DNA of 48,422 nt, counting the filler, from Hydrolagus affinis (Eukaryota): assembly GCA_012026655.1 (NCBI GenBank). It is 3 parts of 3 records of this genome, joined end to end, with 100 filler letters (N's around TTAATTAATTAA, not from the genome) between each part and the next. Parts side by side here need not be neighbours in the genome. Positions count along the whole stretch, not along the records: positions 37,995 to 48,422 come from JAAILG010025352.1; 2 more parts are not named here. The stretch is one strand, 5' to 3'. The position numbers and the translations under genes are program-made. Shown piece by piece: positions 9,660-48,200 of this stretch (position 1 is the first letter of the stretch; each line of letters begins with the position of its first letter). Under the pieces are notes generated by a model that saw only the letters and a list, made by a program, of their open reading frames with translations, was not told the origin of the DNA and did not search any database.

Positions 9660-10148
9660 TAATTAATTTTAATACCACTTTAACATTTCCCTCTTTGACA
9701 GAAGTTATGATCAAGCCCCAGCTTCCAAGCCCCCAACTGTGGTATGTCCCATAGACTACTCTGCATAAAGAGTGCAATATATAGTTTATATGCATATCTG
9801 TGAAAATTGTAATTGTGTGTCCTTGGTTTTGATATAACACTTGGTAATGTTATTGATGCATCTCAAAATGCTTCACATAATGTATATGAAATTGTATTGA
9901 TTGTGTATATTGACATTAATTTCACCTAAATTGAACATTGCGACCCATGCTCATAGTTTTTCCGGTAGAAAGATAGTACGAGAAGTCAGCTACAATTACA
10001 ATTTTCACAGATATGCATATCAACTATATATTGCACTCTTTATGCAGAGTAGTCTACGGGACATACCACAGTTGGGGGCTTGGAAGCTGGGGCTTGATCA
10101 TAACTTCTGTCAAAGAGGGAAATGTTAAAGTGGTATTCAAATTAATTA
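9660..10148. repeat. Long inverted repeat (157-bp arms at 9660-9816 and 9992-10148, 175-bp spacer) in the gene B intron
   Basis: The two arms are near-perfect reverse complements read directly from the sequence. Confidence 0.9.
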
Positions 10149-11051
10149 AGAAGGGGGCCAGGTAGAGGGATTTCCAAAGATTAGGACGGGAAACTCGACC
10201 AAGGATTACAGTTGTTGGACTTCCCCAGGCTTGCTTGTGACATCTGAGTAATGGGGACGACAGAGGAACGAGGTTAGAGAGGTTGGGAGCTGTTCGAGTG
10301 TGAACGTGAGACTGAGGGACCTGAAATCTATTCCTTCGAAGCCATGAAGAGAGTCCACGATCATCAGCGTGCTGATTTTAACAATGTGATTTTAACCAGT
10401 GATCCAGATTTGGATGAATTGGACCTTGTGAATGGTGGAACTGGGTGAGCCAGTAAGGAGTCTGTTTGCAGTCAATGGTGAGATGCAAAAGATGTGAAAA
10501 AGTTTATTAGTGGCATCTGGTGTAAGTAAAATACAAGTCGTCTTTCTCTCTTCCAAATAATTAACATTCAGCAAACTTCCCTACTCCCCACACCTCTGTT
10601 TACCTAGCAATAGGTAGGAACCCAGTTGTTATTCGATTGGTGGTTTGCTTTTCCTGAAGTAATAAAGCCTAAAAAAAATCATATGTTATTCACTCAATGC
10701 ACGATTGTTTGTGGGAGACTGCTGTGCGCAATTGGCTGTTGCCGGTTGCTCCCAAAATATACAGTCAATTCACTTTACGGTGCATTCTGTGAGATGTCTC
10801 AAACTGTGATAACAACAAAATTAGATTTTGCTCCCACCTTGCTCATTGGGAGAACGTCCAGGTGCAAGTGCAAGGATGACATTGACAATTATTATTATTA
10901 TTAATAAAAACCTACCTGATATTTAATCTCCATTAGAGTTCAGTGATATTTGCCTTGCTATGTCGTGACTTGTGTCACCCCTCAGTCTAAACCAATTTCA
11001 AATGAACCCTACATATGCACACTGCCTCATGGTTCTGTCTTTACTTCATAG

Positions 11052-14584: not shown

Positions 14585-15835
14585 ATATGTATATTGGTCA
14601 TACAAACAAATGAATCAAATATATAATCAGTCTAAAATGCTGCAAAGTTCAATTGTGATATGTAAATCATATTTTCTGTCTTATTCATCCTGCCTCTTCA
14701 ATAAAATTGCAGAAGGAACACAAGTGTTAGCTTGAAATTATTTGAATAAAATTCTGCACAATTCATCTACTCCAGTGAAAAAGATAAACCATGGACGGTC
14801 TATCGGTCACGTACCTGCTAAAATGGACGCAACAGGATATAACTAATCGCTCCTTTGTGTTATTTATAACAGCGACAATAAAAAAAGTTACAACGTCTCG
14901 CTCCTCACATTAAATATAGAGTGTGTGGTGAGCATCTGTTGCTACTACACAACTATTATTGCAACCAACACATTTGCTCAAACTTCAACTGCTAGCTCAT
15001 TATGGCCATGTTCAAGTGTCCTGGTTCTTTCACAGAAGCCTGGACTGTCCAATTAATACATAGCAACCAGTAAATTTCCCTACCCTGTTCATTCACCCAT
15101 GCTGTTTTCTAAGTATATTTTTCTTGAGAGTGGGTTACTGATATGTCCGATACTGTCGTGAAATGTTTTCTAAATAGATTACAATGGCAAGTCATTTCCT
15201 CTTGACTATGCACAAACAATCTTTTGACAGATTCCTGTCTAACATTAATGCTGGTGCAAAATTGGTGATATATAATCATGTGATTTGTTCCAAAATGTTT
15301 CTGGTTTATCGTTTCTATCATTTAGCAGTGTAAATTGCATGAGATTAAACTCTATCCTGTTGTCAGCTTTGATGATTCACATCAAAACTGCTTATGAATT
15401 ATTTCAGGCAGGAAAAAATATGTTGTATAAATGGTTATTTTGTAGTGAACCGATATGTTTTGACCAAAGATTGAATATTAGAAGGATATAGCTCTCGTGA
15501 AATTATCCTTGGCGGCTGCTGTCAGTTAAAACAACCCTGACTCCCAAACAATTCAATTGTGGTTCAGTAAATAAAACTTTGAGTGTTGCTTACAAATACA
15601 ATTTACCTTTCACCTTTGTTGCCAGCAACACATGCGGTTCTGGTCACTCCTTAAGTAGGTCGGGATGTTGGGACATCCTCCTGATGTGAAAGATGTTCTT
15701 TAAATGTAATTGTGTTGTTGTTGTAAGTTGACAACTGCCTTTGCAACCCACTCTCAAAATAAAAAAAAAGGCCAATCTAGATCTTTAATAATAATCCTTG
15801 CATTTGATGCAGCGCTTTTCACATCTTCTAGATGT

Positions 15836-20834: not shown

Positions 20835-22193
20835 GTAGGATGCCAACAATCTTACTCTCAATTAATGTTAATTGTTTCTCATGCAAATATTTTCTTATTT
20901 ACAAATAATATTTCCTGCGTGTTTATGAAGTAATATAAATCGCATATTTTACAAGTACAGCTAATATTTCCAAACCCATTATAAACTCTATGCTCATGTC
21001 TATCTATTAAACATTGTATAATACAGTCCCATATATTTATAATGTCCTCATATTACAAAAATATAGGATAATATTATACAATGTTTATAGATAGATTCAA
21101 TCCCTCCATGGCCTTGTCCTGACTATCTCTGCTACCTCCTAACCCCCGAGCAACCTATCCGTTCCCTCCGCTCAGTGGGCTCTGACCTGCTCCATATCCC
21201 TCGACCCACCCACCCCACCATTGGTCGTCGATGCTTCAGCCAGTCTGCCATCAACCTCTGGAATTCCATCCCACAATTGCTCCACCTTGCCCCTCCCTTA
21301 GCTTCCTCCAAGTCCCAACTTAAAACCCTCCCCTTCCACGGTGTGATCGTTCCACCTCAACTTCTCATTGTGTTTGAAAAGCAAGTGCTGGAGAATTGGC
21401 CAGGAATGTCAGTGAGTGCTGCATTACCAAATATGCCTTCAGATACGATCAAGATCCAGTCTGCTGGATGAGATTGACTTTTAAAAAATGACACTTTTCA
21501 ATAAGAGAAGAGTTTCTCAGAGTGTATACTCTAAGAAATAAACATATTTGTGGTTCCACTGGTTCAAAAAAACAGTGATGTGCATTTGAGAATTTTGAAA
21601 TAAAAAGCTCCAATATCATATACAATTTTATTAAGATTTAGACAATATTAAAATTTTATGAAATACAATTTCAGTAAAATTAGATACACTTAGTTAAATA
21701 CAATGTCAATGATTAACTTTTTTAAACCTTACTGATGAGGAAAACAATAGAGCATGTCACCATTGGTTACTTTTCCATTGTAACCAAGTTTAAACTTCAC
21801 ACTGTAACTATAAAGCAATCACGCTTTTTTTTATTGCTCCAGTTCCATGTAACTGGAAACAAAATGAAAAGCTCATATATGTATAAATGGAGATGCAATC
21901 GGAATTGTGGAACACATCTACAATTTTGATGACAATTTGTGCCAGCTTTTCATGCTCTATTTATTTACTTTTTGGGAGAAATGTAGTAATAAAGAATCTT
22001 TCACATGACAACTTTTATAATTCTTAACAACGGCAAACAAATCAAAGTTGGAACTAAAGATTTGTTTAAATCTGAAGCAATAAACCAGAATCAAAATAGT
22101 ATAGTGAAATGAATAGTATATAAACCATAATAAAGTTTAATCTCCACCAATTGAATGTAAGTGTGTAATTCTGCTGTACTATTTATTCTACAG

Positions 22194-31100: not shown

Positions 31101-33289
31101 TGCAGCCCTAGCAATATCTAATGACCCCCATGATGGTTTCTGAGCATTTCAGCGATAATTGTTTCTGTATGTTGTTAGTTTTCTCAGGGGCCATATCATC
31201 GAATTGTCTGTGCTGCTTTGGGATTATAGAAATTAACATCCTTCTAATATTACAGAGTTCGTAACTTCCTAAATTGCCCTAAACGCTGCAAGTGTGCTCG
31301 GATTTCTACACAGAAGACCTGAATGCAAAACTCGGTAAATTTGTTCACCAGAATAATGTGTTTAGAAACAGTACATAATTGGGGAGATAACGTATGTATG
31401 TGACTGTGAAGATGATGGAAGTCTTATCGACTAGGCCCTGGTCATTGTTGACTCTCAATGCTTTAATTCTGATCGAGCTGTTATAATGGACTCCTGATAC
31501 ACGTGATGCGACATGAAGTGTTATTAATAACATTATTACATGGGAAAAACGGTTCTGTCTACAAGGTGCTTAATATTTAGCGCTCTTCCTATTACTCAAT
31601 ATATACCTATTATGTGATGGGAACTGGGCTGAAGTTATCTATTGTGCAGAAGTCACTGGACATTATGGAAGCTGGAGAGATACTAACATTCAAAGCAACC
31701 TGGAGGAGATAGCTCCCTGAGAAAGTCAATGACCACTGAGCACATACAAAATGTTGACACAAGACACAATATAAAATCACGATAGTAATCTTTAGAAGGG
31801 GACGTTCTATATCACTATTTATGCAAGTTGGGCTAAGGGGGTCAGATCAATTTTACGTGGAGGGAATTTAAGACCACATTTCTGTTTTTGTTTCAGTCTG
31901 GGCGTTTCATGGTATTAATAACAATGATAATTATAATTACTTTTGGTTGAAGGTATATCAAGTCAGCAGTATTTCCCATCGTTTCACTCCTTAAAGTAGG
32001 AATAGGAGTCTGGGACCCTGCAGGAAATAGGCTTGTGGTGCTGCCAAGCAGTTTGTGCAACTCAGCACAGGCAGGATAAGAAGTTGTGAATGTGTACAAC
32101 AAATGACACTCTCACATTATTCCGTAAATACTGTAACACAGAGCTGCGTATTATTCTATCAGAAGAGCCGTGCATCTGAAGCAGTAACTGGGTGTGGAGC
32201 TGATAACTGGGGGAATGGACGCAGCTGCCGGTTAAAGAAGTGAAGAAGCTACAGAAGCGGAAATATTGCCGCCCATTAGTGATCTCAGCAAAACCCGAGG
32301 TGTAGGTGTAGCTTTTGAATAGCGCTCATTTTTGAGCGAATCTGAATAATTTGGTGAGCAGGAGAAAAGTCACAATTGACACAAAAATGGAAAGAAACGT
32401 TTGATACTTTGCACCGCGTTTATTATTTCGTATTGATGCAATGGACAGGATCTTCAGACGTTATGAAATAGGAGCAGATTAAAAAAAACACAAAGCTTCT
32501 GATTGAAATCAAAGAAAAATCCACAACAGCCAACTTATTTCTTCAACATTATACCACCCAAATGTTGAACAGTAAATACAAAATATCAAAAAATGTGCGA
32601 CGTTACCCATATAGTTTTATTACTGCCACGAGTCACATTATAATGTAAACGTTATAAAAACAAGAAGAGTCACTATAATTGTTGTATTTGCACAATACAA
32701 AGGTTAATTCCAGCGAAGATAGACATCATATTTTCGGTCGCCAAATATTGCTTCTCAACATCCATAGTTGAGGCACCTGGTGCAGCTGATGTTCCGAAAT
32801 TTATTTTACATGTAAAATATGAGTAGATATATAATTTAAAGGTTCTGCTTGGGTCAGCAGTTATTTTTTACGGTTGTGGTTATTGACATATTTTTTACAA
32901 TATACACACAGATATATATATACACATATGCATACAAACACATACACCACACACACATGCAGACAGAAATACAAAACACACATTTTAAAGCCAGGCTAAA
33001 GCTTCCATTAAATATCCAGAGAACTACAGATTGTGCAAATTACCGTTGGTTTCTGCCCCTATCGATAACCGGTGGGACTATATCAGTAGTGATTATTGGT
33101 ATGTAAGGTTAATAGGATATTTTCATTACCAACACAGAGTCTGGACACAATGGTTCAGCCTTGTACAAACAAGGGGATTAACCCAGCAGATTGGCTGCAA
33201 TGAGCATCACTATCAGTGCTCCCATGGAACAAGTATTGATCAGCACTTGTTAGATCACATCATGGCGACAATGAATTTAATATCCTCAC

Positions 33290-38153: not shown

Positions 38154-38180
38154 TTAGTCAAATCGCTTCCCGGAAAGAGA
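38154..38180 (-). CDS. TRBC: TCR beta constant gene, cytoplasmic exon SLSGKRFD*
   Basis: Polypyrimidine tract plus ttag acceptor, phase 0, shark-type KRFD end. Confidence 0.85.
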   Translation of the reverse strand, partial: SLSGKRFD

Positions 38181-38313: not shown

Positions 38314-38420
38314 CTTGGTTTTCCATGCAATGAACGATATGATAACCCCATAGAGGACACTTTTACACAGCAGGATTAGATATGTTAATTTTCCAACCAC
38401 CATGCTCTCCTGTATCTCAT
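38314..38420 (-). CDS. TRBC: TCR beta constant gene, TM exon
   Basis: DEIQESMVVGKLTYLILLCKSVLYGVIISFIAWKTK with the TCR CART motif (Y...K..LY) and intramembrane Lys. Confidence 0.93.
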
Positions 38421-38457: not shown

Positions 38458-38903
38458 GTCTCTGCAAGTCTCTATCCATCTCCCTCTCACACCTCAATCC
38501 ATCTTGACTCCCCCAAGTCTCTAACCATCTCCCTCTCATGCCTTGATGCATCCCCTGACTCCTTCGAGTCTCCACCCATCTCCCTTTCAATCCATCCATT
38601 GATTCCCCCAAGTCTATCCATCTCGCTGTCGCATCTCAATCCATCCCCTGACTTCCCTCAAGTCTCTATCCATTTCCCTCTCGTACCTCAATCCATCCCT
38701 TGACTCCCCCAAATCTCCATCTATTTCCCTTTCACACCTCAATCCTTTCCCTGACTCCCCTCAAGTTTCTATGCATCTCCTTCTCGCACCTCAATCCTTC
38801 CCCTGACTCTCCAAAGTCTCTATCTGTCTCCCTCTCACACCTCAACCCGCCCACTACTCCTCAAGCTTCACCTATCGCCCTCTCTTAACTCAATCCATCC
38901 CCT
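38458..38903. repeat. ~50-bp minisatellite, about 9 copies, in the C-beta intron
   Basis: Unit ~GTCTCTATCCATCTCCCTCTCACACCTCAATCCATCCCCTGACTCCCCCAA. Confidence 0.85.
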
Positions 38904-38942: not shown

Positions 38943-38966
38943 CTTTTGTCATGGAGTAACAGATTT
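38943..38966 (-). CDS. TRBC: TCR beta constant gene, connecting-peptide mini-exon EICYSMTK (interchain Cys)
   Basis: 24 nt, strong acceptor ccccctctag and AAAG|gtgagt donor, phase 1-1. Confidence 0.88.
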
Positions 38967-39429
38967 CTAGAGGGGGAACAAATGAAAAAAATCATTACAT
39001 TTTACTGTATAATAATATAATAATAATATTAATCCTTGCATTTGATATAGTGTTTTTCACATCTTCTAGACGTCTCAAAGTGCTTCACAGAATATACTGT
39101 AAGGTGAAGTGACTGTATATTTGTGAGCGAAATGCAGCAGCCAATTGTGCACAGCAGTGTCTCCACGTGGATTGAAATAACCAATTTATTATTTTTCTTG
39201 AGGGATTATTATTGGACGTGTGGGTAAGGAAACTTTCCCAAGGTTTCGTCCTGCCTGGAGCAATGTTCAGTGAATGAGCATCCACAGCTTTCTGGGGGGT
39301 AGAGAATTCCATAAATTCACTGGGTGAAGAAACGTTTTCTCAACGCAGTTCGAAAAGGCTGAGCTTTCATCCAGACACTATGACCCTAAGTTTTAGATTC
39401 TCCAACCGAGGGAAAGAGTCTCACAACAT

Positions 39430-39640
39430 GTACCCTGTCAAGGCCGGTTTGAAGACTTTCCTCTTCGACCGTGCCTTTTGTTCCCCCCCCACCCCGAATT
39501 CTTCGACCTCCCCTTCGTGTTTCACCCCCTCCCAAACACTCCCCTCCCAGCTCGGGTCACGCGCCTCCTGTACAGCGCCTTGGGACGTCCTCCCGACGTG
39601 AAAGGCGCTCTATAAGTGTAATTTGTTGTTGTTGTTGTTG
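39430..39640 (+). mobile_element. L2 LINE 3' end
   Basis: Near-identical to 14390-14584, with a (TTG)n tail. Confidence 0.85.
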
Positions 39641-39797
39641 TCAAGCTCCTTGAGGATCTTATAGGTTACCAAAATATACACTTGGCTAAATAGTGATGTA
39701 GGATTTTGTGTGAATCAGATGCCTGACTGATCATGTTGTTGGTTTTCGATGTGGGTCAGACAATGATACATACACACACATATATACATATATTTAC

Positions 39798-40002
39798 CTC
39801 CAGTTACTTTCAAATTTTTCGAAAACGTCTCTATAATTTCTCCAATCTGGACATGGTTGACATGGCAGGCTACAGTTTTGGCCAATGACCAGTGATGTAC
39901 AGAGAGACGAAGGCGGCTGGTCACAGAATACAAACGATCCTTTTCTTTCTCCACAGATTTTGAGTCTGTCTGGATTATTCTGTCGCTCTCCTGTGGATTA
40001 AC
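39798..40002 (-). CDS. TRBC: TCR beta C domain, second half-exon (VNPQ...YSVTSRLRL...VACHVNH...KVTG)
   Basis: tttcacag acceptor, phase 0; GGAG|gtaaat donor, phase 1; 205 nt. Confidence 0.9.
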
Positions 40003-40059
40003 CTGTGAAAACGAGGCACATTCGGAAATGTCTCGGACCATTTCAGGGGGCAGTCAGTA

Positions 40060-40495
40060 AAAATGCACAGGCAGACTGGTAAAACGGGCAGACATGTGGC
40101 AGATGAAGTTCAACGTGGATTGAAATGTGCAGTGATGCACTTTGGAAGGAAGCATAAGGAGGGGCAGTGTAAGATAAATGGAAGAATCTTAAAAGGAGGT
40201 GAAGGAACAGAGGGACCTCGGGAGTTCATGTAACTAAATCTTTGAAGGTGGCAGGACAGGTAGACAAAGCTGTTACAAAAGCTTATGGCTTGTTAGGCTT
40301 CATGAATTGGGTCCCGGAATGCAAAAGCCAGGAAGTTTGGATGAACCTCGATAAAACACCGCTTACTCTTATTCATTTCTGGGCCCCGTACCATAGTCAA
40401 GGCATTGGAGAGCGTGCAAGGGAGATTGACTAGTATGGTCAATAAATGAGGGACTTTAGTTATCAGGAGAGGCAAGAGAGGTTTTCATCCTTGGA
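40060..40495 (+). mobile_element. CR1 LINE fragment inside the intron that splits the C-beta domain
   Basis: TGGCAGATGAAGTTCAACGTGG...GACAAAGCTGTTAC motifs shared with the CR1 copy at 47000-47290. Confidence 0.75.
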
Positions 40496-40680
40496 GCAGA
40501 TTGAAGTGACCAAATTACTGGTGTTTTTTCTTTTGAGGGATTATTATTAGGCACTATTATTAGTGTGCATTTGTGTGTGTGTGTGTATCTCGCTTGCAAG
40601 TTGAGTGCTCCAATCAATGAGCTGATGTCCTCCAAATGTGCTGATCTATTGAATTGTTTAACACTCTGCGAGAGACTTAC

Positions 40681-40832
40681 CAGCTTATCATTAATTTTCC
40701 ACTCTATCTCAACTGTGTCTGGGAAAAACTCAGAGACAAGACACACATAGGTTCCCCATTTCTCATTCCTCAGCTCCTCCTCCGATGCGTGGTAGAGGAA
40801 GATTTGGGGATCTTTTGGGACTTCATCTTTCT
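40681..40832 (-). CDS. TRBC: TCR beta C domain, first half-exon (KDEVPKDPQIFLY...YVCLVSEFFPDTVEIEWKINDKL)
   Basis: ctctcag acceptor (phase 1, matching the J donors); CTG|gtaagt donor, phase 0; 152 nt. Confidence 0.9.
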
Positions 40833-40839
40833 CTGAGAG

Positions 40840-41390
40840 AGCAACGGGAGAGAAAGAATGAGAGGGGATGACAGGGAGAGTGAGAGAGAGAGAGAGAATG
40901 AAGTAGGGAGAGAATGAGAAAGAATGAAAATGAAAGACAGAAAGAGAATGAGAGAGAAATAGAAAAGTGGGGGGCAAGAAGGAGAGAGAATAAGAGAGAC
41001 TGAAGGAGGGAAGTGAGAATGGAATCTCTGTCAGTCCATCTCTGTGTTTCTTTTGATCTCTCTATCTCTTACTCTCTGCCACTCTGTATCTCTCTCCGTC
41101 AATATCTTTCTTTCTCTGTCTCTCTGTCTAATCCACCCTGACCCTCCCTATCTCTCTCTCTCTCTGTCTCTCTTACTGTCTCTTTCTCTCTCTCTATCTC
41201 GCTGTCTCTCTCTGACCTTCTCTGTCTCTGCCCTTGCATCTATCTCCCTACCATTTTCTCTCACAATATATCTGTCTTTCTCTGTCTCTCTGTTTTGCTC
41301 TGTATTTCCGTCTATCTATTTATCTACCGGTATCTTCTTTCTCTCTCTTTTTCTCTCTATATCTCTGTCTATCTATTTGTCTCTGTCTAG
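40840..41390. repeat. GA/CT low-complexity tracts (also at 44390-45150)
   Basis: Composition. Confidence 0.8.
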
Positions 41391-44300
41391 TACGCCAGCT
41401 CCCCCCAACCCCTCACCACCCATTGCCCAATTTCGCAGCAGATAGTCAATGTGAAGGTAATAATACTGAAGAAAATCAGACTTAGAATAGAAAGTATAGA
41501 CATAAAAGCAACAACCCTGGAGGCTTAAGAGACCAAGAAGGGATGTGAGAAATGGTTGACAGGCAACATAGGAAAACATCAATAGATTAGAACCACGTAT
41601 TGAAAACAAAAGAGTAGTTAATGTAAGGTAGAAGTGGAAAGGGAAATCTAGTCATAGAAAATAAGTGTCTGGAAGAGATTTCCAATGAGCGTTTTAGCTC
41701 AGGTTCCCAACAGAAAGCAGTCATTACATTTATATCCCGCGAGAGACAGAGAGATGGACAGACAGAGAGAGGGAGAAGGAGGGATATTGGGCACCAGACT
41801 TTAACGGAGAATATTTAAAAGACTGATACCACAAGAGGAACAACTACAATATGTGCAGAGACTAGAGAGATTGGATGGTTCTACTAACTAGTCTTGTAGC
41901 TCAGTGGTTAGACCTGGGTTCGATTCCAGGCAAGGCAAAACCTTGAGCAAGTTTCCTGACCCCCTAATAAGTATCCCTCAGACCACATTAATAATTTGAT
42001 CACTCAATCTATGACTGTTTGAGTGTATGCTGCTGTGTGCAATGTGTCACCCCCAAAATATGCAGTGAATTCACTCTACAGTATATTCTGTGAAGCATGT
42101 TGAGACATCTAGAAGACTTGAAAAGTTGCTATATCAAATACTCTGACTATTCTGGATTATTATTATCAAAATCCTTCACAATTTTGAACAGCTCTATTAA
42201 ATCTCCCCTCAACCTTTCTCCGCTCTAAAGGAGAAGATTCACAGTCTCTCTTGTCTCCCATAACTGAAGTCCATCAACTCTCAATTTAAGATACTTAGTA
42301 AAAAAGAGCAAGTTGGGTAGTTTAGGAGAATTTTGTGTACACAGCATGGTTAGGATATGGAATATCCTGGCAGGAGAAGTGCTGGTGACAGAATTCATAT
42401 CGTCGTTTGAGAGAGAACTAGACATGACAAAGGTGCGGGGAAAGGGTAGGTGAGTGGGACTGAAAGGATTGTTCTTGAGGGACTCAGGGAGAGCAGACAC
42501 AATGGACCAATGATTTCCTTCTAGGAACATAGGAGAATAGGAACAGATGGAGGCCATTCAGCCCTTAGAGCCTCTTCTGCCATTTCATTAGATCATGGCT
42601 AATCCTACTAATCCTTTCAATTCCAATTTCCCGCTTTCTTTCCCAGTATCACCCTGATCCACCAAACACCCATCAACCTCACTCTTTGAAGGTGTGGATG
42701 GATCCAGCATGCAAAATGACCTTTTGGGGGAGAGAATTCCAGATTTCTACCAAACCTTTGAGTGAAAAAAATGCTCACACTTAAATGGCCTGGTTCCAAT
42801 GTTAAGACTGGGCCCCCTTGTTGTGGATTCTCCCACCAGAGAAAGTAGCTTCTCTGTATCTTCCCTATCAAATCCCTTTGTCATCTTAAATATCCCAATC
42901 AAACCACACCTCAACTTCTCAATCTCTCGGTCACATTCTGGTGAACCTGGGCTGCCCTCCCTCCAGGGCCAATATATCTTGGGCAAGTCTCCTTGCTCCA
43001 CAATCCTGATAATAATCCATCCAAAAAAACAAAACACAATAATAAAAATTGCTCACTTCAATCCACGCCTGTTTGTAGGAAACTGCCTTGTGCAATTGGC
43101 TGCCACATTTCGCCCACAAATATACAATCAATTCACGTTACAGTATATTCCATGAAGCGCTTTGAGACATTGATAAGATGTGAAAAGCATCTATATCAAC
43201 TGCAAGGATTATCATTATTAGTAGTAACTTTCCCAACTGAATGCAGTCTCCAGATGGGGTCTGACTAACACTCTACACAGCTGAAACACCATTTCTTCCC
43301 CTTCGGAGACATAACATTTCTATTCTACGACTCGGTTTCTAACTCAAGGTTCATAGTTTTAATTCAGAAATTGGACACCTGGATACTAACCCTCACCAAA
43401 CTCCGTACCTCCATCACACTGGACCTTGCCAGGCCAAACTGGCTCCCAATTTCCAAACAGATCGACTTCAAGATCCTCTCATCTGTTTTCAAGTCGCTTC
43501 AGGCTCCCTGTCTCCCCAGTTTACTTTCCCCCTCACTCCACCACCCCCTGCCCCTAGAGACACGTCTCAAAGCGCTTCACAGAATATACTGAAAACAACA
43601 ACAAGATTATACTTGTATAGCGGCTTTCACCTTGGGAGGACTTCCCAAGGCGCTGGACAGTCTGTGTTTCGCTCAGTGTAAAGTGAATTCACGGTATATT
43701 TGTGGGCGAAACACGGCAGCCAATTGCACACAGTATTTGTCCCACAAACAGTCATGGATTGAAATGACCAATTTATTATTGTTTCTTTTTTTTTTGAGGG
43801 ATTATTATTGGACGTGTGGAATAAGGGAACTTGCTCTCCCTTGCTTCTCGCTTGTAAGGCGAGTGCTCTAATCACTGAGCTGCAGGACTCAAATTCCTCT
43901 CTGTGTTTCAACCTCTGAAGCCAGGACCAAATTTATTTCAGATTATCCCTCCATCTTGCCAACTCGCTGCTCTGTTCGTTCCGTATCTCCATTTCTAACA
44001 CTGGGACCAATTTTGTCAGCTGCAGTCCCACTATAAGTCTGTCTGTAAATCTGGGTCCAGTTCAAAACCATCTCAAACGAACGAGAATAAATTGGTCATT
44101 TTCGATCCACGACTGTTTGTGGGGACATTGGCTGCCATGTTTCACCCACAAATAAACAGTCAATTCGCTTTACGAAGCACTATATCAAACACAAAGATTT
44201 TTATTCTTATTTTTATTATTATTATCTCACCAAACCCCTCAGCTGTTCCTTCCACGTTTCTGACCCCCAAAGCAAGGACCAATTTCAGAGCAGGAATAGA

Positions 44301-45181
44301 CCTCTCTCTCACCCATTTCCCTGTACTCTTTCTTATGTATCTGCATTTTTTTTTATCATTGCTGTATCTCATACTCACAGTCTGCCTTACAGAGAGAGAG
44401 GAAAATTGAGAGACAAATAAAGAGGGCGAGAAACTCAGAGGTAGAGACTGAAATGGGGGCAGAAAGAGATTAGGAGAGAGAAACGGAGGGAGGGAGACTT
44501 AGAGAATTAGACAAAGGGACTGAGAGAAAGACTGAGACAGAGAGAGAGATAAAGAAAGAAACTGAGACAAAGTGAGGAAATAGACAGAGAGATACTGACA
44601 GACAGGGCAGAGTGGCTGAGAGGATTAGAAATGGAGATGGAGAGAGACTGCGAGACTTTGTGAAGCAGAGAGACAGACAGACAGAGAGAGAGACTGAGAG
44701 ACTGAACGAGAGATTGAGAACGGCAGAGACACGGCAGAGACATGGAAACTGAGACACAGAGAGAGTAGATTCTCAATTTTTAAATTATAATTGGGTCATT
44801 CAATGTACGGCTGTTTGTGAAACTCTGCTGTGCGCAATGGGGTGCCACATTTTGTCCACAGTATACACAAGCAATTCATTTTACTGTATATTCTTTGAAC
44901 CGTGTTGAAGACGTGATAAGGCGTGATATGAAAAGCAAGGATTATTATTATGTCTAGACTTTCTGAGACTGAGAGGGACAGAGAGAGACCGAGACAAAGC
45001 AAGACAAGCAAAATAAGAAGAGATGTGGATAGACTGAGAGACATGGAGACTCAGACAATGAAAAACTAGACACTGAGAGTTACACACAAACAGACAGTGA
45101 GAGGCTGACAGAGAGACAATTAGAGATATGGACTGAGACATTAATGCTCAGTTTGAATCAGATAAATAAACTCAACCTTAA

Positions 45182-45227
45182 CAATAACAATTAATTTTGT
45201 TCCATTTCAAAAGTAGTTTACATCAGA
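45182..45227 (-). pseudogene. TRBJ: Pseudo J-beta (SDVNYF*NGTKLIVI)
   Basis: TGA in place of the first Gly of FGxG, donor mutated to G|ttaag, no recognisable nonamer. Confidence 0.7.
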
Positions 45228-45287
45228 GGAGCGCAGAGACAGACAACTGCAGCAGGGAAAGAGGTAGACAGAGAGGAGTGCGGAGAG

Positions 45288-45453
45288 NNNNNNNNNNNNN
45301 NNNNNNNNNNNNNNNNNNNNNNNNNNNNNNNNNNNNNNNNNNNNNNNNNNNNNNNNNNNNNNNNNNNNNNNNNNNNNNNNNNNNNNNNNNNNNNNNNNNN
45401 NNNNNNNNNNNNNNNNNNNNNNNNNNNNNNNNNNNNNNNNNNNNNNNNNNNNN
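45288..45453. other. Assembly gap, 166 N, no linker
   Basis: N run. Confidence 0.98.
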
Positions 45454-45819
45454 GTGGGTTACAATTACAGTAGAGAAAGAGGGGGTGAGGGAGACCCGGA
45501 GAAAGAGAAACTTGGGAGAAAGAGACACAGACAGACGGATGGATGGACAGACAGACAGACAGACAAAAGGACAGACGGACAGACGGACGGACGGACAGAT
45601 TGACAGGCAGCCGGAGAAAGAGGGAGACTGAGACAGAGAGAGAGAGACTGGGTTTGGGGGTGGAGGAGCAAGCGAGAGAGAGAGGGAGAGAAGAGTAATG
45701 GGATTAGAACGGAGAGCTCTAGTGTGGGAGAGAGCGAGCAGACACGAAGGCAGGACAGCAGGGGTTGGGATTTAGAGGAGAAAACCTTATCAAAGATTGA
45801 AAAATGTATTTTAACTCAC

Positions 45820-45865
45820 TGTAAACGGTCAGTTTTGTGCCTCCACCGAAGTACGCAGGATTGTA
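45820..45865 (-). CDS. TRBJ: TCR beta J segment, YNPAYFGGGTKLTVY
   Basis: FGGGT motif, A|gtgagt phase-1 donor, heptamer TGCTGTG at 45866-45872; nonamer weak. Confidence 0.88.
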
Positions 45866-46012
45866 CACAGCAAGCAATATCTGACACATATCTCACAGCT
45901 GAGAGAGAGTGGAACATAGAGAGAGGGGGTGACAGGGACAGAGAGGGGGTGAAATACAGACAAGGACGCAGAGAGAGAAAGAGACAGACCCTGACATCTA
46001 ATCAATACTTAC

Positions 46013-46060
46013 TCAGGACTCTCAGTTTGGTTCCACCTCCGAAGTAGGCAATGGAGTTTG
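46013..46060 (-). CDS. TRBJ: TCR beta J segment, NSIAYFGGGTKLRVL
   Basis: FGGGT motif, A|gtaagt donor; 12-RSS TGTTTTCGT-12-TGGTGTG at 46061-46088. Confidence 0.92.
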
Positions 46061-46674
46061 CACACCATGTCAACGACTGACGAAAACACTCCCCGTCTCT
46101 TCTCTCCCCCATCGCTCGCTCGCTCGCTCGCTCTCCCTCCTCTTTCCCTCTGGCTCTCCTTCTATCTCACTCCTTTTCTCTGCCTCTCTCACTCCAGGTC
46201 TTCACACAACTGTTGAGGAGTCGCGTAGCTTAAATGGTTTAGACCGCTTGCCTTGAAAGCCAGAGGACCTGGATTCGATTCCCATCCAGTGCAAGTGCGT
46301 CACGCACAAAATATACATTTAATTCACATTACAGTAGATTCTGTAAAGTACTTTGAGACTCTAGAAGATGTGATAAGACCCTATATCAAATCCAAGGATT
46401 ATTTTCACTGTTGTTTCCATCCTCGCTCTCCTTTCCCCATTTTCCCTATGCCTCCTATTCACCGAATCTCTGTCATTGTGTCTCCTGCTGTCTCCTCTGT
46501 TGATTTTTCTCCTCATTCCCTGTATTGTTCTCTTCCAAAACGTCCCTACCTCTTACTCCGACCATCTCTCCTCTCTCTCTCTCTCTCTCTCGTGCTCTAC
46601 AACTAATTCTAACGAGAAGTTTACCTGTAAATGCCACCTGTGTTCGACCTAACTCAGACTCCCCTCCCACCCCT

Positions 46675-46713
46675 AGTTTTTGTACAGCTGTCAGTGAGAG
46701 ATGTATCACAGTG
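46675..46713 (-). promoter_or_regulatory. 3' D-beta 23-RSS (CACTGTG-23-ACAAAAACT)
   Basis: Exact 23-nt spacer and near-consensus nonamer. Confidence 0.95.
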
Positions 46714-46728
46714 GCTCCCTGTTGTCCC
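46714..46728 (-). CDS. TRBD: TCR beta D segment GGGACAACAGGGAGC (open in all three frames)
   Basis: Flanked by a 12-RSS and a 23-RSS; begins GGGACA like other vertebrate D-beta segments. Confidence 0.95.
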
Positions 46729-46756
46729 CACAATGTGAAACACTCGTTCAAAAACA
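46729..46756 (-). promoter_or_regulatory. 5' D-beta 12-RSS (TGTTTTTGA-12-CATTGTG)
   Basis: Exact 12-nt spacer. Confidence 0.95.
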
Positions 46757-46994: not shown

Positions 46995-48200
46995 TCAGAT
47001 GTAGACAGAATGGTAAAATGGGCAGACACATGGCAGATGAAATTTAATGTGGAGAAATGTGAGGTGATGCATTTTGGGAGGAGAAATTAGGGGAGGCAAT
47101 ATAGGCTAGGTAGTACTTAGTAATTTAAATAATTAGTAATTTTAAGGGGTGCGAAGGAACAGAGAGATCCGGGGGTTTGTGCAAGTGGTTCTTTGAAGGT
47201 GGCAGGACAGGTAGACAAGGCTGTTAAAAAAGCATACGGGACACTAGCCTTTATAAATAGAGGAATAGAGTACAAAAGGCAAGAAGTCAACAACAAAATT
47301 ACATTTCTAGAGCGCCTTTCACATCGGGAGGACGTCACAAGTTGCTGAACAGTTAGGTAGGGACCCAAGCAGGGGGGCAGGGGTCGGGGTGGGGGGAAGG
47401 AGAGTAGGAGAGGGGGGAGAGTTAGGAGGGGTTAGGGTTAGGGTTAGAGGTAAGGAGAGTAGGAGAGGGGGGAGAGTTAGAAAGGGAGCAGAAGGCACAG
47501 TCGACAAGGAAAGTCTTGAGACCGGCCTTAAAGGAGGAAAGGGAGGAAGTGAGGCAAAGGGATTGCGGGATGGAGTTCCTGAGTGTAGGAGCAGAGAGGC
47601 TGAAAGCCCGGCCGCTGATGGTAGGGTGGTTTGGGTGGGGGACATGGAGCAGAGCCCGCTGAATGGAGGGGATGGGGAGACAGCGGGTTGGAGAGATAGG
47701 CGGGGCAAGGCCGTGAATGGGCTTGAAAGTGAGGATGAGGATCTTGAATTCGATCCTCTGGGGAGATGGGGAGCCAGTGGAGATGGGCGAGGGTGGGAGT
47801 GATGGTTACCACACTTTAGGAAGGATGTTAAGGAATTGGAAAGGGTGCAGAGGAGATTTACCAGGATGGCACCATGAAGGACTTCTGCTATGAGGAAAGG
47901 CTAGAGAGGCTAGGCTTATTCTCATTGGAGCAGAGAAGGTTACGAGGAGACCTGATAGAGGTTTCTAAGATCATGAGGGGATTCAATAGGGTAAACAGGG
48001 AAAAACTGTTTCCACTGGTGGGTGCATCAGTGATTCGTGGTCACAGATTTAAAATAGTTTAAAAAAAAGTAGCGGGGAGGTCGACATTTATTTGGGAAGG
48101 ATGGTATGGGGAGAGAACTGGGGAGTGGGATTGAATTTTGCAAAAAGTCGGCACAGACTCGATGGCCCAAATGGCCTCCTTTTGTGCCGTAAGATTCTAT
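46995..48200 (+). mobile_element. CR1 LINE fragments interrupted by a minus-strand L2 3' fragment (~47290-47790)
   Basis: WADTWQMKFNVEKCEVMHFG and ERLERLGLFSLEQRRLRGDLIEV (CR1 RT C-terminus) flank an L2 LHWLPI-type segment. Confidence 0.85.

What the first reader, a model, noticed from the sequence alone, without database searches (positions are those of the whole stretch)
39798..40832. TCR-beta constant Ig domain split into two exons by a phase-0 intron
Seen: the domain is encoded by 152-nt and 205-nt exons separated by a 678-nt GT-AG intron just after the C-strand Trp (…EWKINDKL|VNPQ…). The intron is largely SINE and CR1 sequence, and the spliced frame is open through hinge, TM and tail. 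Known: in mammals the TCR C domain is a single exon (four-exon C-beta gene); here there are five. Inference: a lineage-specific intron gain in an antigen-receptor C domain, or a retained ancestral half-domain structure.
Basis: partly seen in the sequence, partly recalled or inferred. Interest (0 to 1): 0.7.

Follow-up and report, generated by a model that had tools for sequence, protein, structure and literature searches.

The report
Split TCR-beta constant-domain exon, chimaera lineage
The T-cell receptor beta constant gene here has its immunoglobulin domain cut into two exons by an intron also found in the elephant shark, but absent from four sharks and skates and a bony fish, so it is most likely a rare, old intron gain in the chimaera lineage.

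Summary
On the minus strand a C1-set Ig domain is encoded by exons 40832-40681 (152 nt) and 40002-39798 (205 nt). They are separated by a 678-nt GT-AG phase-0 intron, of which 82% is a LINE fragment plus a SINE fragment. The frame continues through a 24-nt hinge exon, a 107-nt transmembrane exon and a tail ending KRFD-stop. A canonical D segment and two J segments lie upstream, so this is a complete TCR-beta D-J-C cluster.

The intron is not a recent transposon hit. The elephant shark (Callorhinchus milii) TCR-beta gene is split at the same codon boundary, and both intron ends align with the window, but its repeats are different. A rearranged VDJ-C protein record in UniParc that matches the elephant-shark gene reads straight across the junction.

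The domain is one uninterrupted exon in Heptranchias, Rhincodon, Chiloscyllium, Leucoraja and a goby, and in tetrapods and salmonids according to the literature. The holocephalan proteins carry 1-2 extra residues exactly at the intron site.

Best reading: a functional gene with an intron gained on the holocephalan stem. No RNA data exist for the window species, so splicing there is inferred. The split is implicit in public elephant-shark gene models, but I found no paper describing it. Moderate interest.

The parts
46675..46756 (-). D-beta segment. The core GGGACAACAGGGAGC lies at 46728-46714. Its 5' RSS is a T-rich nonamer, a 12-bp spacer and CATTGTG. Its 3' RSS is CACTGTG, a 23-bp spacer and ACAAAAACT.
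   Evidence: Regex scan and flanks.
46013..46090 (-). J-beta 1. The RSS is AGTGTTTTC, a 12-bp spacer and CATGGTG. The coding part 46062-46013 reads ..NSIAYFGGGTKLRVL. It ends one base into a codon, before GTAAGT (phase 1).
45820..45893 (-). J-beta 2. The coding part 45865-45820 reads YNPAYFGGGTKLTVY plus 1 nt, then GTGAGT. The RSS limits are approximate. It is orthologous to the C. milii J (NPAFFGSGSKLAVI).
40681..40832 (-). C-beta exon 1a, 152 nt. It encodes strands A-B-C of the C1-set domain, including Cys23 (YVCLV) and Trp41 (EIEWK).
   Evidence: It is 68.6% identical in protein to the C. milii exon 1a. dN/dS against C. milii is 0.39.
40003..40680 (-). Phase-0 GT-AG intron, 678 nt. The donor is CTG|GTAAGT and the acceptor is TTTTCACAG|GTT. 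The unique ends are 40625-40680 and 40003-40068. Of these, about 31 nt at the donor side and about 46 nt at the acceptor side align with the C. milii intron.
   Evidence: DNA contigs across both junctions.
40069..40500 (+). CR1-like LINE 3' fragment inside the intron, antisense to the gene. It is not present at the orthologous place in C. milii.
   Evidence: depth.
40499..40624 (-). SINE fragment inside the intron. It belongs to the same family as 43757-43882, which carries a tRNA-like Rfam match.
   Evidence: joints.
39798..40002 (-). C-beta exon 1b, 205 nt. It encodes strands C' to G, including YSVTSRLRLS and Cys104 (VACHV), and ends in phase 1.
   Evidence: It is 43-45% identical in protein to C. 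milii. dN/dS is 0.73.
38943..38966 (-). Connecting-peptide (hinge) exon, 24 nt, reading (E)ICYSMTK with the interchain Cys. Phase 1 on both sides.
38314..38420 (-). Transmembrane exon, 107 nt, reading DEIQESMVVGKLTYLILLCKSVLYGVIISFIAWKTK with the conserved Lys and Tyr. It ends in phase 0.
38154..38180 (-). Coding part of the tail exon, SLSGKRFD followed by TAA. The 3' UTR runs on towards the edge of the piece.

Best explanation
This is an intact TCR-beta D-J-J-C cluster of a holocephalan (chimaera-lineage) fish. Its constant Ig domain is encoded by two exons because a spliceosomal phase-0 intron lies at the C-C' turn.

The intron is old. It predates the split between this species and Callorhinchus milii. 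It was most likely gained on the holocephalan stem, after the divergence from elasmobranchs, by an insertion that left 1-2 extra codons at the site. It was later inflated independently in each lineage by LINE and SINE insertions.

In T cells, V-D-J rearrangement is followed by splicing in the order J, 1a, 1b, hinge, TM, tail. This gives a normal TCR-beta chain.

Shown:
- the anatomy of the gene;
- conservation of the intron position, phase and ends in C. milii;
- absence of the intron in four elasmobranchs and a teleost;
- a contiguous junction in a rearranged VDJ-C protein record that matches the C. milii gene.

Inferred:
- splicing in this species;
- the direction of change (gain rather than loss);
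- an insertional origin.
For: 1. **Complementary C1-set halves and canonical splice sites**.
2. **A full open frame of 170 codons** with Cys23, Trp41, Cys104, the hinge Cys, the TM Lys and Tyr, and the KRFD end.
3. **A D segment with 12/23 RSS and two J segments** with FGGG motifs and phase-1 donors.
4. **Same split in C. milii (locus L002):** exon 1a ends ...GAL|GTGAGT at 14644, the intron is 14645-15813 (1169 nt), and exon 1b starts at 15814 with VKNEDS. The intron termini align with the window.
5. **Orthology with C. milii:** the window aligns to the C. milii locus over 7797 of 10428 bases, including all exon bases. Elasmobranch loci align only through repeats.
6. **Different repeats in the two species:** the repeats in the window's intron are not at the orthologous place in the C. 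milii intron.
7. **Protein record across the junction:** P0063, a clean rearranged VDJ-C chain, reads ...EWEINDAL-VKNEDS....
8. **Single uninterrupted C-domain exon elsewhere:** Heptranchias perlo, Leucoraja erinacea, Rhincodon typus, Chiloscyllium punctatum and Eucyclogobius newberryi. The same holds in axolotl and salmonids (PMC12529555, PMC10464911).
9. **Extra residues at the site:** holocephalan proteins have 1-2 extra residues exactly at the intron site.
10. **Selection:** dN/dS is below 1 in both halves.
11. **Independent DNA contigs** carry the intron.
Against: - **No RNA data for this species:** every run found looks like low-coverage DNA. Use of the 40681->40002 junction here is therefore inferred from the orthologue.
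- **Weaker constraint on exon 1b:** it evolves fast (about 44% protein identity, dN/dS 0.73).
- **Thin sampling:** only two holocephalan genomes were compared. The window's species is not identified; it is placed only by its similarity to C. milii.
- **Provenance of P0063:** it is only a UniParc record without a species name.
- **Source of the intron:** its origin is unknown, so the 'insertion' rests only on the extra codons.
- **Polarity:** it rests on parsimony with a limited set of species.
Confidence: 0.72

Rival explanations
1. Retained ancestral half-domain structure. The primordial C1-set or TCR-beta C exon was split, and the intron was lost independently in elasmobranchs and in bony vertebrates.
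For: Some IgSF genes do encode an Ig domain in two exons (general knowledge; not tested here). The intron is old enough to be shared by two divergent holocephalans.
Against: - It needs at least two losses against one gain (PMC12529555; PMC10464911).
- By general knowledge, other C1-set domains of antigen receptors are single exons.
- The intron is phase 0, whereas the conserved TRBC introns are phase 1, 1, 1 and 0 at domain borders (PMC10464911).
- Extra residues sit exactly at the site in holocephalans only.
Confidence: 0.1
2. Pseudogene: a once single exon was broken by transposon insertion, and the GT-AG borders are fortuitous.
For: 82% of the intron is LINE or SINE. No RNA evidence exists for this species. 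Exon 1b has dN/dS 0.73.
Against: - The break is at the same codon boundary in C. milii, with homologous non-repeat intron ends but different repeats.
- All five exons are open, all splice sites are canonical, and all key residues are kept at dS of about 0.4-0.7 from C. milii.
- A rearranged VDJ-C protein record matching the C. milii gene uses the orthologous junction.
- The D and J segments have good RSS.
Confidence: 0.05
3. The intron serves exon-level diversification. Alternative exon-1a half-domains, each behind its own D-J set, are spliced to a shared set of exon 1b, hinge, TM and tail. Alternatively, the intron marks a boundary for gene conversion between C-beta copies.
For: In C. milii, P0063 and P0037 differ strongly in the exon-1a half (67% identity). 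They are 98.5-100% identical from exon 1b to the end.
Against: - P0063 differs by one residue in exon 1b, which suggests a separate gene copy or an allele.
- No second exon 1a lies within the 34 kb around the C. milii gene.
- The window holds only one exon 1a.
- Homogenisation of parts of duplicated TRBC genes by gene conversion is already known in mammals (PMC2188480).
Confidence: 0.05

Closest known systems
Canonical vertebrate TRBC gene (four exons: C domain, connecting peptide, transmembrane, cytoplasmic tail)
   Same: - A C1-set domain with Cys23, Trp41 and Cys104.
- A small hinge exon with the interchain Cys.
- A 107-nt TM exon with the conserved Lys and Tyr, and a short tail exon.
- Splice phases 1, 1, 1 and 0, as described for salmonid and human TRBC (PMC10464911).
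- A D-J-C cluster layout.
   Different: The C-domain exon is divided by an extra phase-0 intron, giving five coding exons. The hinge exon is 24 nt.
Callorhinchus milii TCR-beta constant gene (XP_042201712.1; UniProt A0A4W3HFG8; scaffold MU249900.1)
   Same: - The intron position and phase are the same, and the intron ends align.
- The whole locus is colinear, with 70-80% nucleotide identity in non-coding DNA.
- The C regions are 58% identical in protein.
   Different: - The intron is 1169 nt against 678 nt, with other repeats inside.
- There is one residue fewer at the junction.
- Exon 1b is only about 44% identical.
Salmonid TRBV6, a V-exon interrupted by two extra introns (PMC10464911)
   Same: A lineage-specific extra intron inside an antigen-receptor Ig-domain exon. 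It is conserved across related species, and the gene is still expressed.
   Different: That case concerns a V domain of one V gene in teleosts. This one concerns the constant domain, through which every beta chain made from this cluster must be spliced.
Elasmobranch TCR-beta C genes (Heptranchias, Rhincodon, Chiloscyllium, Leucoraja; horn shark and nurse shark cDNAs)
   Same: The domain order and the TM and tail motifs (…LTYLIL.CKS.LY…KRFD) are the same. The proteins are 35-42% identical.
   Different: The C domain is one uninterrupted exon, and the protein is 1-2 residues shorter at the site.

Membership tests
TCR-beta constant gene (TRBC) | C1-set Ig domain with the conserved Cys23, Trp41 and Cys104 | tested here: met
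   Both halves match Pfam C1-set. YVCLV, EIEWK and VACHV align with shark and teleost TCR-beta.
TCR-beta constant gene (TRBC) | Lies downstream of a D segment with asymmetric 12/23 RSS and of J segments with FGXG and a phase-1 donor | tested here: met
   D at 46728-46714 with a 12-bp and a 23-bp spacer. Two J segments with YFGGGTKL and one base before GT.
TCR-beta constant gene (TRBC) | Connecting peptide with the interchain Cys, a TM segment with a conserved Lys and Tyr, and a short cytoplasmic tail | tested here: met
   EICYSMTK; KLTYLILLCKSVLYGV; SLSGKRFD-stop.
TCR-beta constant gene (TRBC) | Closest relatives are TCR-beta chains known from cDNA | tested here: met
   The nearest database proteins are C. 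milii and H. perlo TCR-beta models. The H. perlo chain in turn retrieves the horn shark and nurse shark TCR-beta cDNA products. The window's C region aligns with them at 37-38% identity.
TCR-beta constant gene (TRBC) | Canonical exon layout: the whole C domain in one exon (four coding exons) | tested here: not met
   The domain is split at 40681|40002. This is the variant feature. The remaining exons and phases are canonical (PMC10464911).
TCR-beta constant gene (TRBC) | Expressed in T cells as a rearranged VDJ-C mRNA and paired with TCR-alpha | not testable with these tools
   No RNA runs exist for this species. The only indirect support is the rearranged VDJ-C protein record P0063, which matches the C. 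milii gene.
Lineage-specific spliceosomal intron gain | The intron is present at the same position and phase in orthologues within a clade | tested here: met
   The window and C. milii share the position and phase, and the intron ends align.
Lineage-specific spliceosomal intron gain | The intron is absent from orthologues in the sister clade and in outgroups | tested here: met
   A single exon in four elasmobranchs and a goby, and in axolotl and salmonids (PMC12529555, PMC10464911).
Lineage-specific spliceosomal intron gain | The source or mechanism of the inserted sequence is identified | tested here: inconclusive
   The shared intron ends are low-copy. The repeats inside are later and lineage-specific. 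The only trace of an insertion is 1-2 extra codons at the site.
Transposon-disrupted pseudogene | A broken frame or lost splice and RSS signals, with no conservation of the interruption in relatives | tested here: not met
   The frame is open, the signals are canonical, and the interruption is conserved in C. milii.

The most novel reading that the evidence does not exclude
The intron is a synapomorphy of living holocephalans. It would be a datable intron gain in a lineage reported to have the fewest intron changes of any jawed vertebrate. It sits inside a domain that every beta chain made from this cluster must splice through. It may also act as a boundary that lets the two halves of C-beta evolve or be homogenised separately. 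This is hinted at by the C. milii chains, which differ in the 1a half but are nearly identical from 1b onward.
Probability: 0.5. Interest if true: 0.5.

Novelty: new variant of a known kind. Interest (0 to 1): 0.4.

Why it matters
Antigen-receptor constant domains are a textbook case of 'one Ig domain, one exon', and intron gains in vertebrates are rare. The elephant-shark genome paper reports fewer intron gains or losses in C. milii than in any bony vertebrate (PMC3964593). A conserved, apparently functional intron inside the TCR-beta C domain of chimaeras is therefore useful in three ways.

- **As a marker:** it is a clean phylogenetic character for Holocephali.
- **As a warning:** programs that expect a four-exon TRBC will mis-call the gene.
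- **As a study case:** it shows how a new intron becomes fixed in an essential immune gene and then swells with transposons.

It does not change how the receptor works.

Tried and rejected
- **Word-indexed protein search:** a search with exon 1a found nothing, although C. milii relatives exist. This is a limit of the tool, not evidence of absence.
- **RNA evidence:** the RNA-run search listed one run of unknown kind. The second search listed only DNA-like runs. Laying four runs gave genomic contigs only, with no spliced joint.
- **PDB searches:** searches with the exon pieces returned mostly antibody C domains. They confirmed the fold but not the chain type.
- **Missing genomic DNA:** none could be fetched for Scyliorhinus, Heterodontus, Hemiscyllium or Carcharodon because the files are too large.
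- **Elephant-shark genome paper:** its supplement is not held.
- **Literature:** five searches found no description of a split C-beta exon in cartilaginous fish. One broader search for split TCR constant domains found none either.
- **Second C-beta cluster in C. milii:** I looked for one next to the gene, to explain the second exon-1a variant. There is none within 34 kb.
- **Assembly artefact:** rejected, because independent contigs carry the intron.
- **Ig light-chain gene:** rejected because of the hinge Cys, the TM Lys, the D segment and the TRBC-type exon sizes. The J motif FGGGTKLTV does resemble a lambda J.

Full report
**1. What is there**

The gene lies on the minus strand.

- **Exon 1a:** after the acceptor ...TCTCTCAG the exon runs 40832-40681 (152 nt). 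Its first two bases complete the codon begun by a J segment. The next 50 codons read KDEVPKDPQIFLYHASEEELRNEKWGTYVCLVSEFFPDTVEIEWKINDKL and are followed by GTAAGT.
- **Intron:** 678 nt later, after ...TTTTCACAG, exon 1b begins.
- **Exon 1b:** it runs 40002-39798 (205 nt), reads VNPQESD...KNLKVTG plus one base, and is followed by GTAAAT.
- **Domain halves:** each piece alone passes the Pfam C1-set gathering score, and together they cover complementary halves of the profile. Exon 1a covers positions 2-39 and exon 1b covers 45-84 of 86. PDB searches confirm an Ig constant fold for both.
- **Downstream exons:** a 24-nt hinge exon (38966-38943, EICYSMTK), a 107-nt TM exon (38420-38314...KLTYLILLCKSVLYGVIISFIAWKTK) and a tail (38180-38154, SLSGKRFD, TAA). 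Together they give one open frame of 170 codons.
- **Splice phases:** 1 (J-C), 0 (the new intron), 1, 1 and 0. Without the new intron, this is exactly the pattern described for human and salmonid TRBC (PMC10464911).

**2. Surroundings**

Upstream lie two J segments, both ending one base before a GT donor:
- J1, ...NSIAYFGGGTKLRVL, coding 46062-46013;
- J2, YNPAYFGGGTKLTVY, coding 45865-45820.

There is also a textbook D segment. Its core is GGGACAACAGGGAGC at 46728-46714. It has a 12-bp-spacer RSS on the 5' side and CACTGTG, 23 bp and ACAAAAACT on the 3' side. The piece is therefore a complete D-J-J-C TCR-beta cluster.

**3. The intron's content**

- **LINE fragment:** 40069-40500 is the 3' part of a CR1-like LINE on the + strand, antisense to the gene. 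It has a sister copy at 47003-47287 and many copies in the elephant-shark locus.
- **SINE fragment:** 40499-40624 matches 43757-43882, which carries a tRNA-like Rfam hit.
- **Depth:** word depth of genomic contigs is 10^3-10^5 over 40020-40625, against tens on the exons.
- **Unique sequence:** about 82% of the intron is repeat. Only 40003-40068 and 40625-40680 are unique.

**4. Is it real DNA?**

All runs that hold the region behave as low-coverage genomic DNA. Contigs cross the acceptor side in X1 (39650-40264), X3 (39859-40264) and X7 (39940-40101). X2 holds 40036-40259, which reaches into the intron from the acceptor side. X1 also crosses the donor (40599-40866).

One X1 copy is about 96% identical. 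It has an in-frame 3-nt deletion at 39993 and keeps the intron.

No RNA run was available.

**5. Relatives**

A full HMMER scan with exon 1b found only two TCR-beta-type representatives:
- Callorhinchus milii (A0A4W3HFG8, and its cluster mate XP_042201712.1);
- Heptranchias perlo (XP_067835378.1).

In the C. milii scaffold the domain is split at the homologous codon boundary. Exon 1a ends ...EWKIDGAL|GTGAGT at L002 14644. The intron is 1169 nt. Exon 1b starts with VKNEDS at 15814.

The intron ends are visibly homologous between the two species:
- donor side: gtaagtctctcgcagagtgttaaacaat against gtgagtatctctcagagtgttaaagaat;
- acceptor side: ggtccgagacatttccgaatgtg against ggttccgagacatttcctaatgtg.

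The window aligns with the C. milii locus over 7797 of its 10428 bases, including all 515 exon bases. Non-coding identity is 70-80%. Four elasmobranch loci align only through repeats. The C region is 58% identical to C. milii and 35-42% identical to elasmobranchs.

The window therefore comes from a holocephalan relative of C. milii, and the cluster is orthologous. The LINE and SINE of the window's intron are not at the orthologous place in the C. milii intron. The transposons therefore entered an intron that already existed.

**6. Is the junction used?**

P0063 (UniParc UPI0003D87E08) is a clean rearranged chain...[34 protein letters not shown].... From exon 1b onward it is 98.5-100% identical to the C. 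milii gene. It reads ...EWEINDAL-VKNEDSRP... straight across the junction.

A contiguous V-D-J junction can only come from a T-cell transcript, so the orthologous junction is spliced in vivo. The RefSeq and Ensembl models of C. milii use it too.

For the window species itself, splicing is inferred from the following:
- canonical sites and an intact frame;
- all key residues conserved;
- dN/dS of 0.39 (exon 1a), 0.73 (exon 1b) and 0.34 (TM), at dS of about 0.4-0.7.

**7. Distribution**

The C domain is one uninterrupted block in these species:

| Species | Locus | Coordinates |
|---|---|---|
| Heptranchias perlo | L001 | 31905-32252 |
| Leucoraja erinacea | L003 | 45097-45459 |
| Rhincodon typus | L004 | 44480-44824 |
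| Chiloscyllium punctatum | L007 | 21719-22087 |
| Eucyclogobius newberryi (goby) | L005 | 9721-10179 |

The axolotl paper describes a single C-beta exon as typical (PMC12529555). Salmonid TRBC genes have four exons (PMC10464911).

One gain on the holocephalan stem explains this. An ancestral split would need at least two losses.

Two further points fit a gain. The holocephalan proteins have 1-2 extra residues exactly at the site: DKL-VN and GAL-V, against GK-K in elasmobranchs. The intron is also phase 0, unlike the phase-1 introns that bound Ig-domain exons. The mechanism of the gain remains unknown, because the shared intron ends are low-copy.

**8. Position in the fold**

A single-sequence AlphaFold model of the C. 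milii domain has modest confidence (mean pLDDT 65, but 85 around the site). It places the junction, L50|V51, in a short C' strand just after the C-C' turn. Exon 1a therefore encodes strands A-B-C and exon 1b encodes C' to G.

**9. Known or new?**

The split is implicit in public C. milii gene models. Five searches on shark, cartilaginous-fish or holocephalan TCR genes, one broader search on split TCR constant domains, and the main text of the elephant-shark genome paper gave no description of it. That paper's supplement is not held.

The nearest published analogue is salmonid TRBV6, a V exon with two inserted introns conserved across salmonids (PMC10464911). [quoted passage not shown]

**10. 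Verdict**

The 'lineage-specific intron gain' interpretation is supported, and the lineage is Holocephali rather than this species alone. The pseudogene and artefact readings are rejected. The function of the protein is ordinary. Interest is moderate.

Noticed in passing
window 46675-46756, 46013-46090, 45820-45893 (minus strand): A canonical D-beta segment with 12/23 RSS and two J-beta segments lie upstream of the C gene. The piece is therefore a whole D-J-J-C cluster.
   Followed up: yes
P0063 against L002/L006 (C. milii): A rearranged VDJ-C chain matching the C. milii gene has an exon-1a half only 67% identical to the sequenced gene. From exon 1b to the end it is 98.5-100% identical. Its exon 1a is not within 34 kb of the gene. 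Either gene conversion is bounded by the new intron, or there is a second C-beta copy elsewhere.
   Followed up: partly
window 39443-39649, 39993, 40645 (run X1 contigs): DNA contigs of one run carry a copy about 96% identical. It has an in-frame 3-nt deletion in exon 1b and a 13-nt insertion in the intron, and it lacks the 39443-39649 repeat segment. This is an allele, a paralogue or a sister species.
   Followed up: no
window 39017-39615: Very high-copy SINE sequence, with word depth of 10^6-10^7 in all four runs, fills the intron between exon 1b and the hinge exon. Related copies lie at 42050-42150, 43080-43190 and 43606-43733.
   Followed up: partly
window 38510-38840: About three tandem copies of a unit of roughly 103 nt (73-81% alike) lie in the hinge-TM intron. 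Each copy aligns to the same short stretch of the C. milii intron.
   Followed up: no
window 40840-41400, 44370-45140, 45540-45700: Long purine/pyrimidine-rich (GA)n-like low-complexity tracts lie in the J-C intron. The tract next to exon 1a is colinear with C. milii. An assembly gap of N lies within about 45290-45460.
   Followed up: no
L002 1411-1734, 3226-3549, 4452-4751 (C. milii): V-beta segments lie only 3-6 kb upstream of the J segment in the C. milii scaffold. This suggests a very compact V-D-J-C arrangement.
   Followed up: no
database names: Several shark TCR-beta chains are named 'immunoglobulin lambda-1 light chain-like' or 'kappa light chain-like' in RefSeq (Scyliorhinus, Mustelus, Rhincodon, Carcharodon). 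These are annotation mislabels.
   Followed up: no
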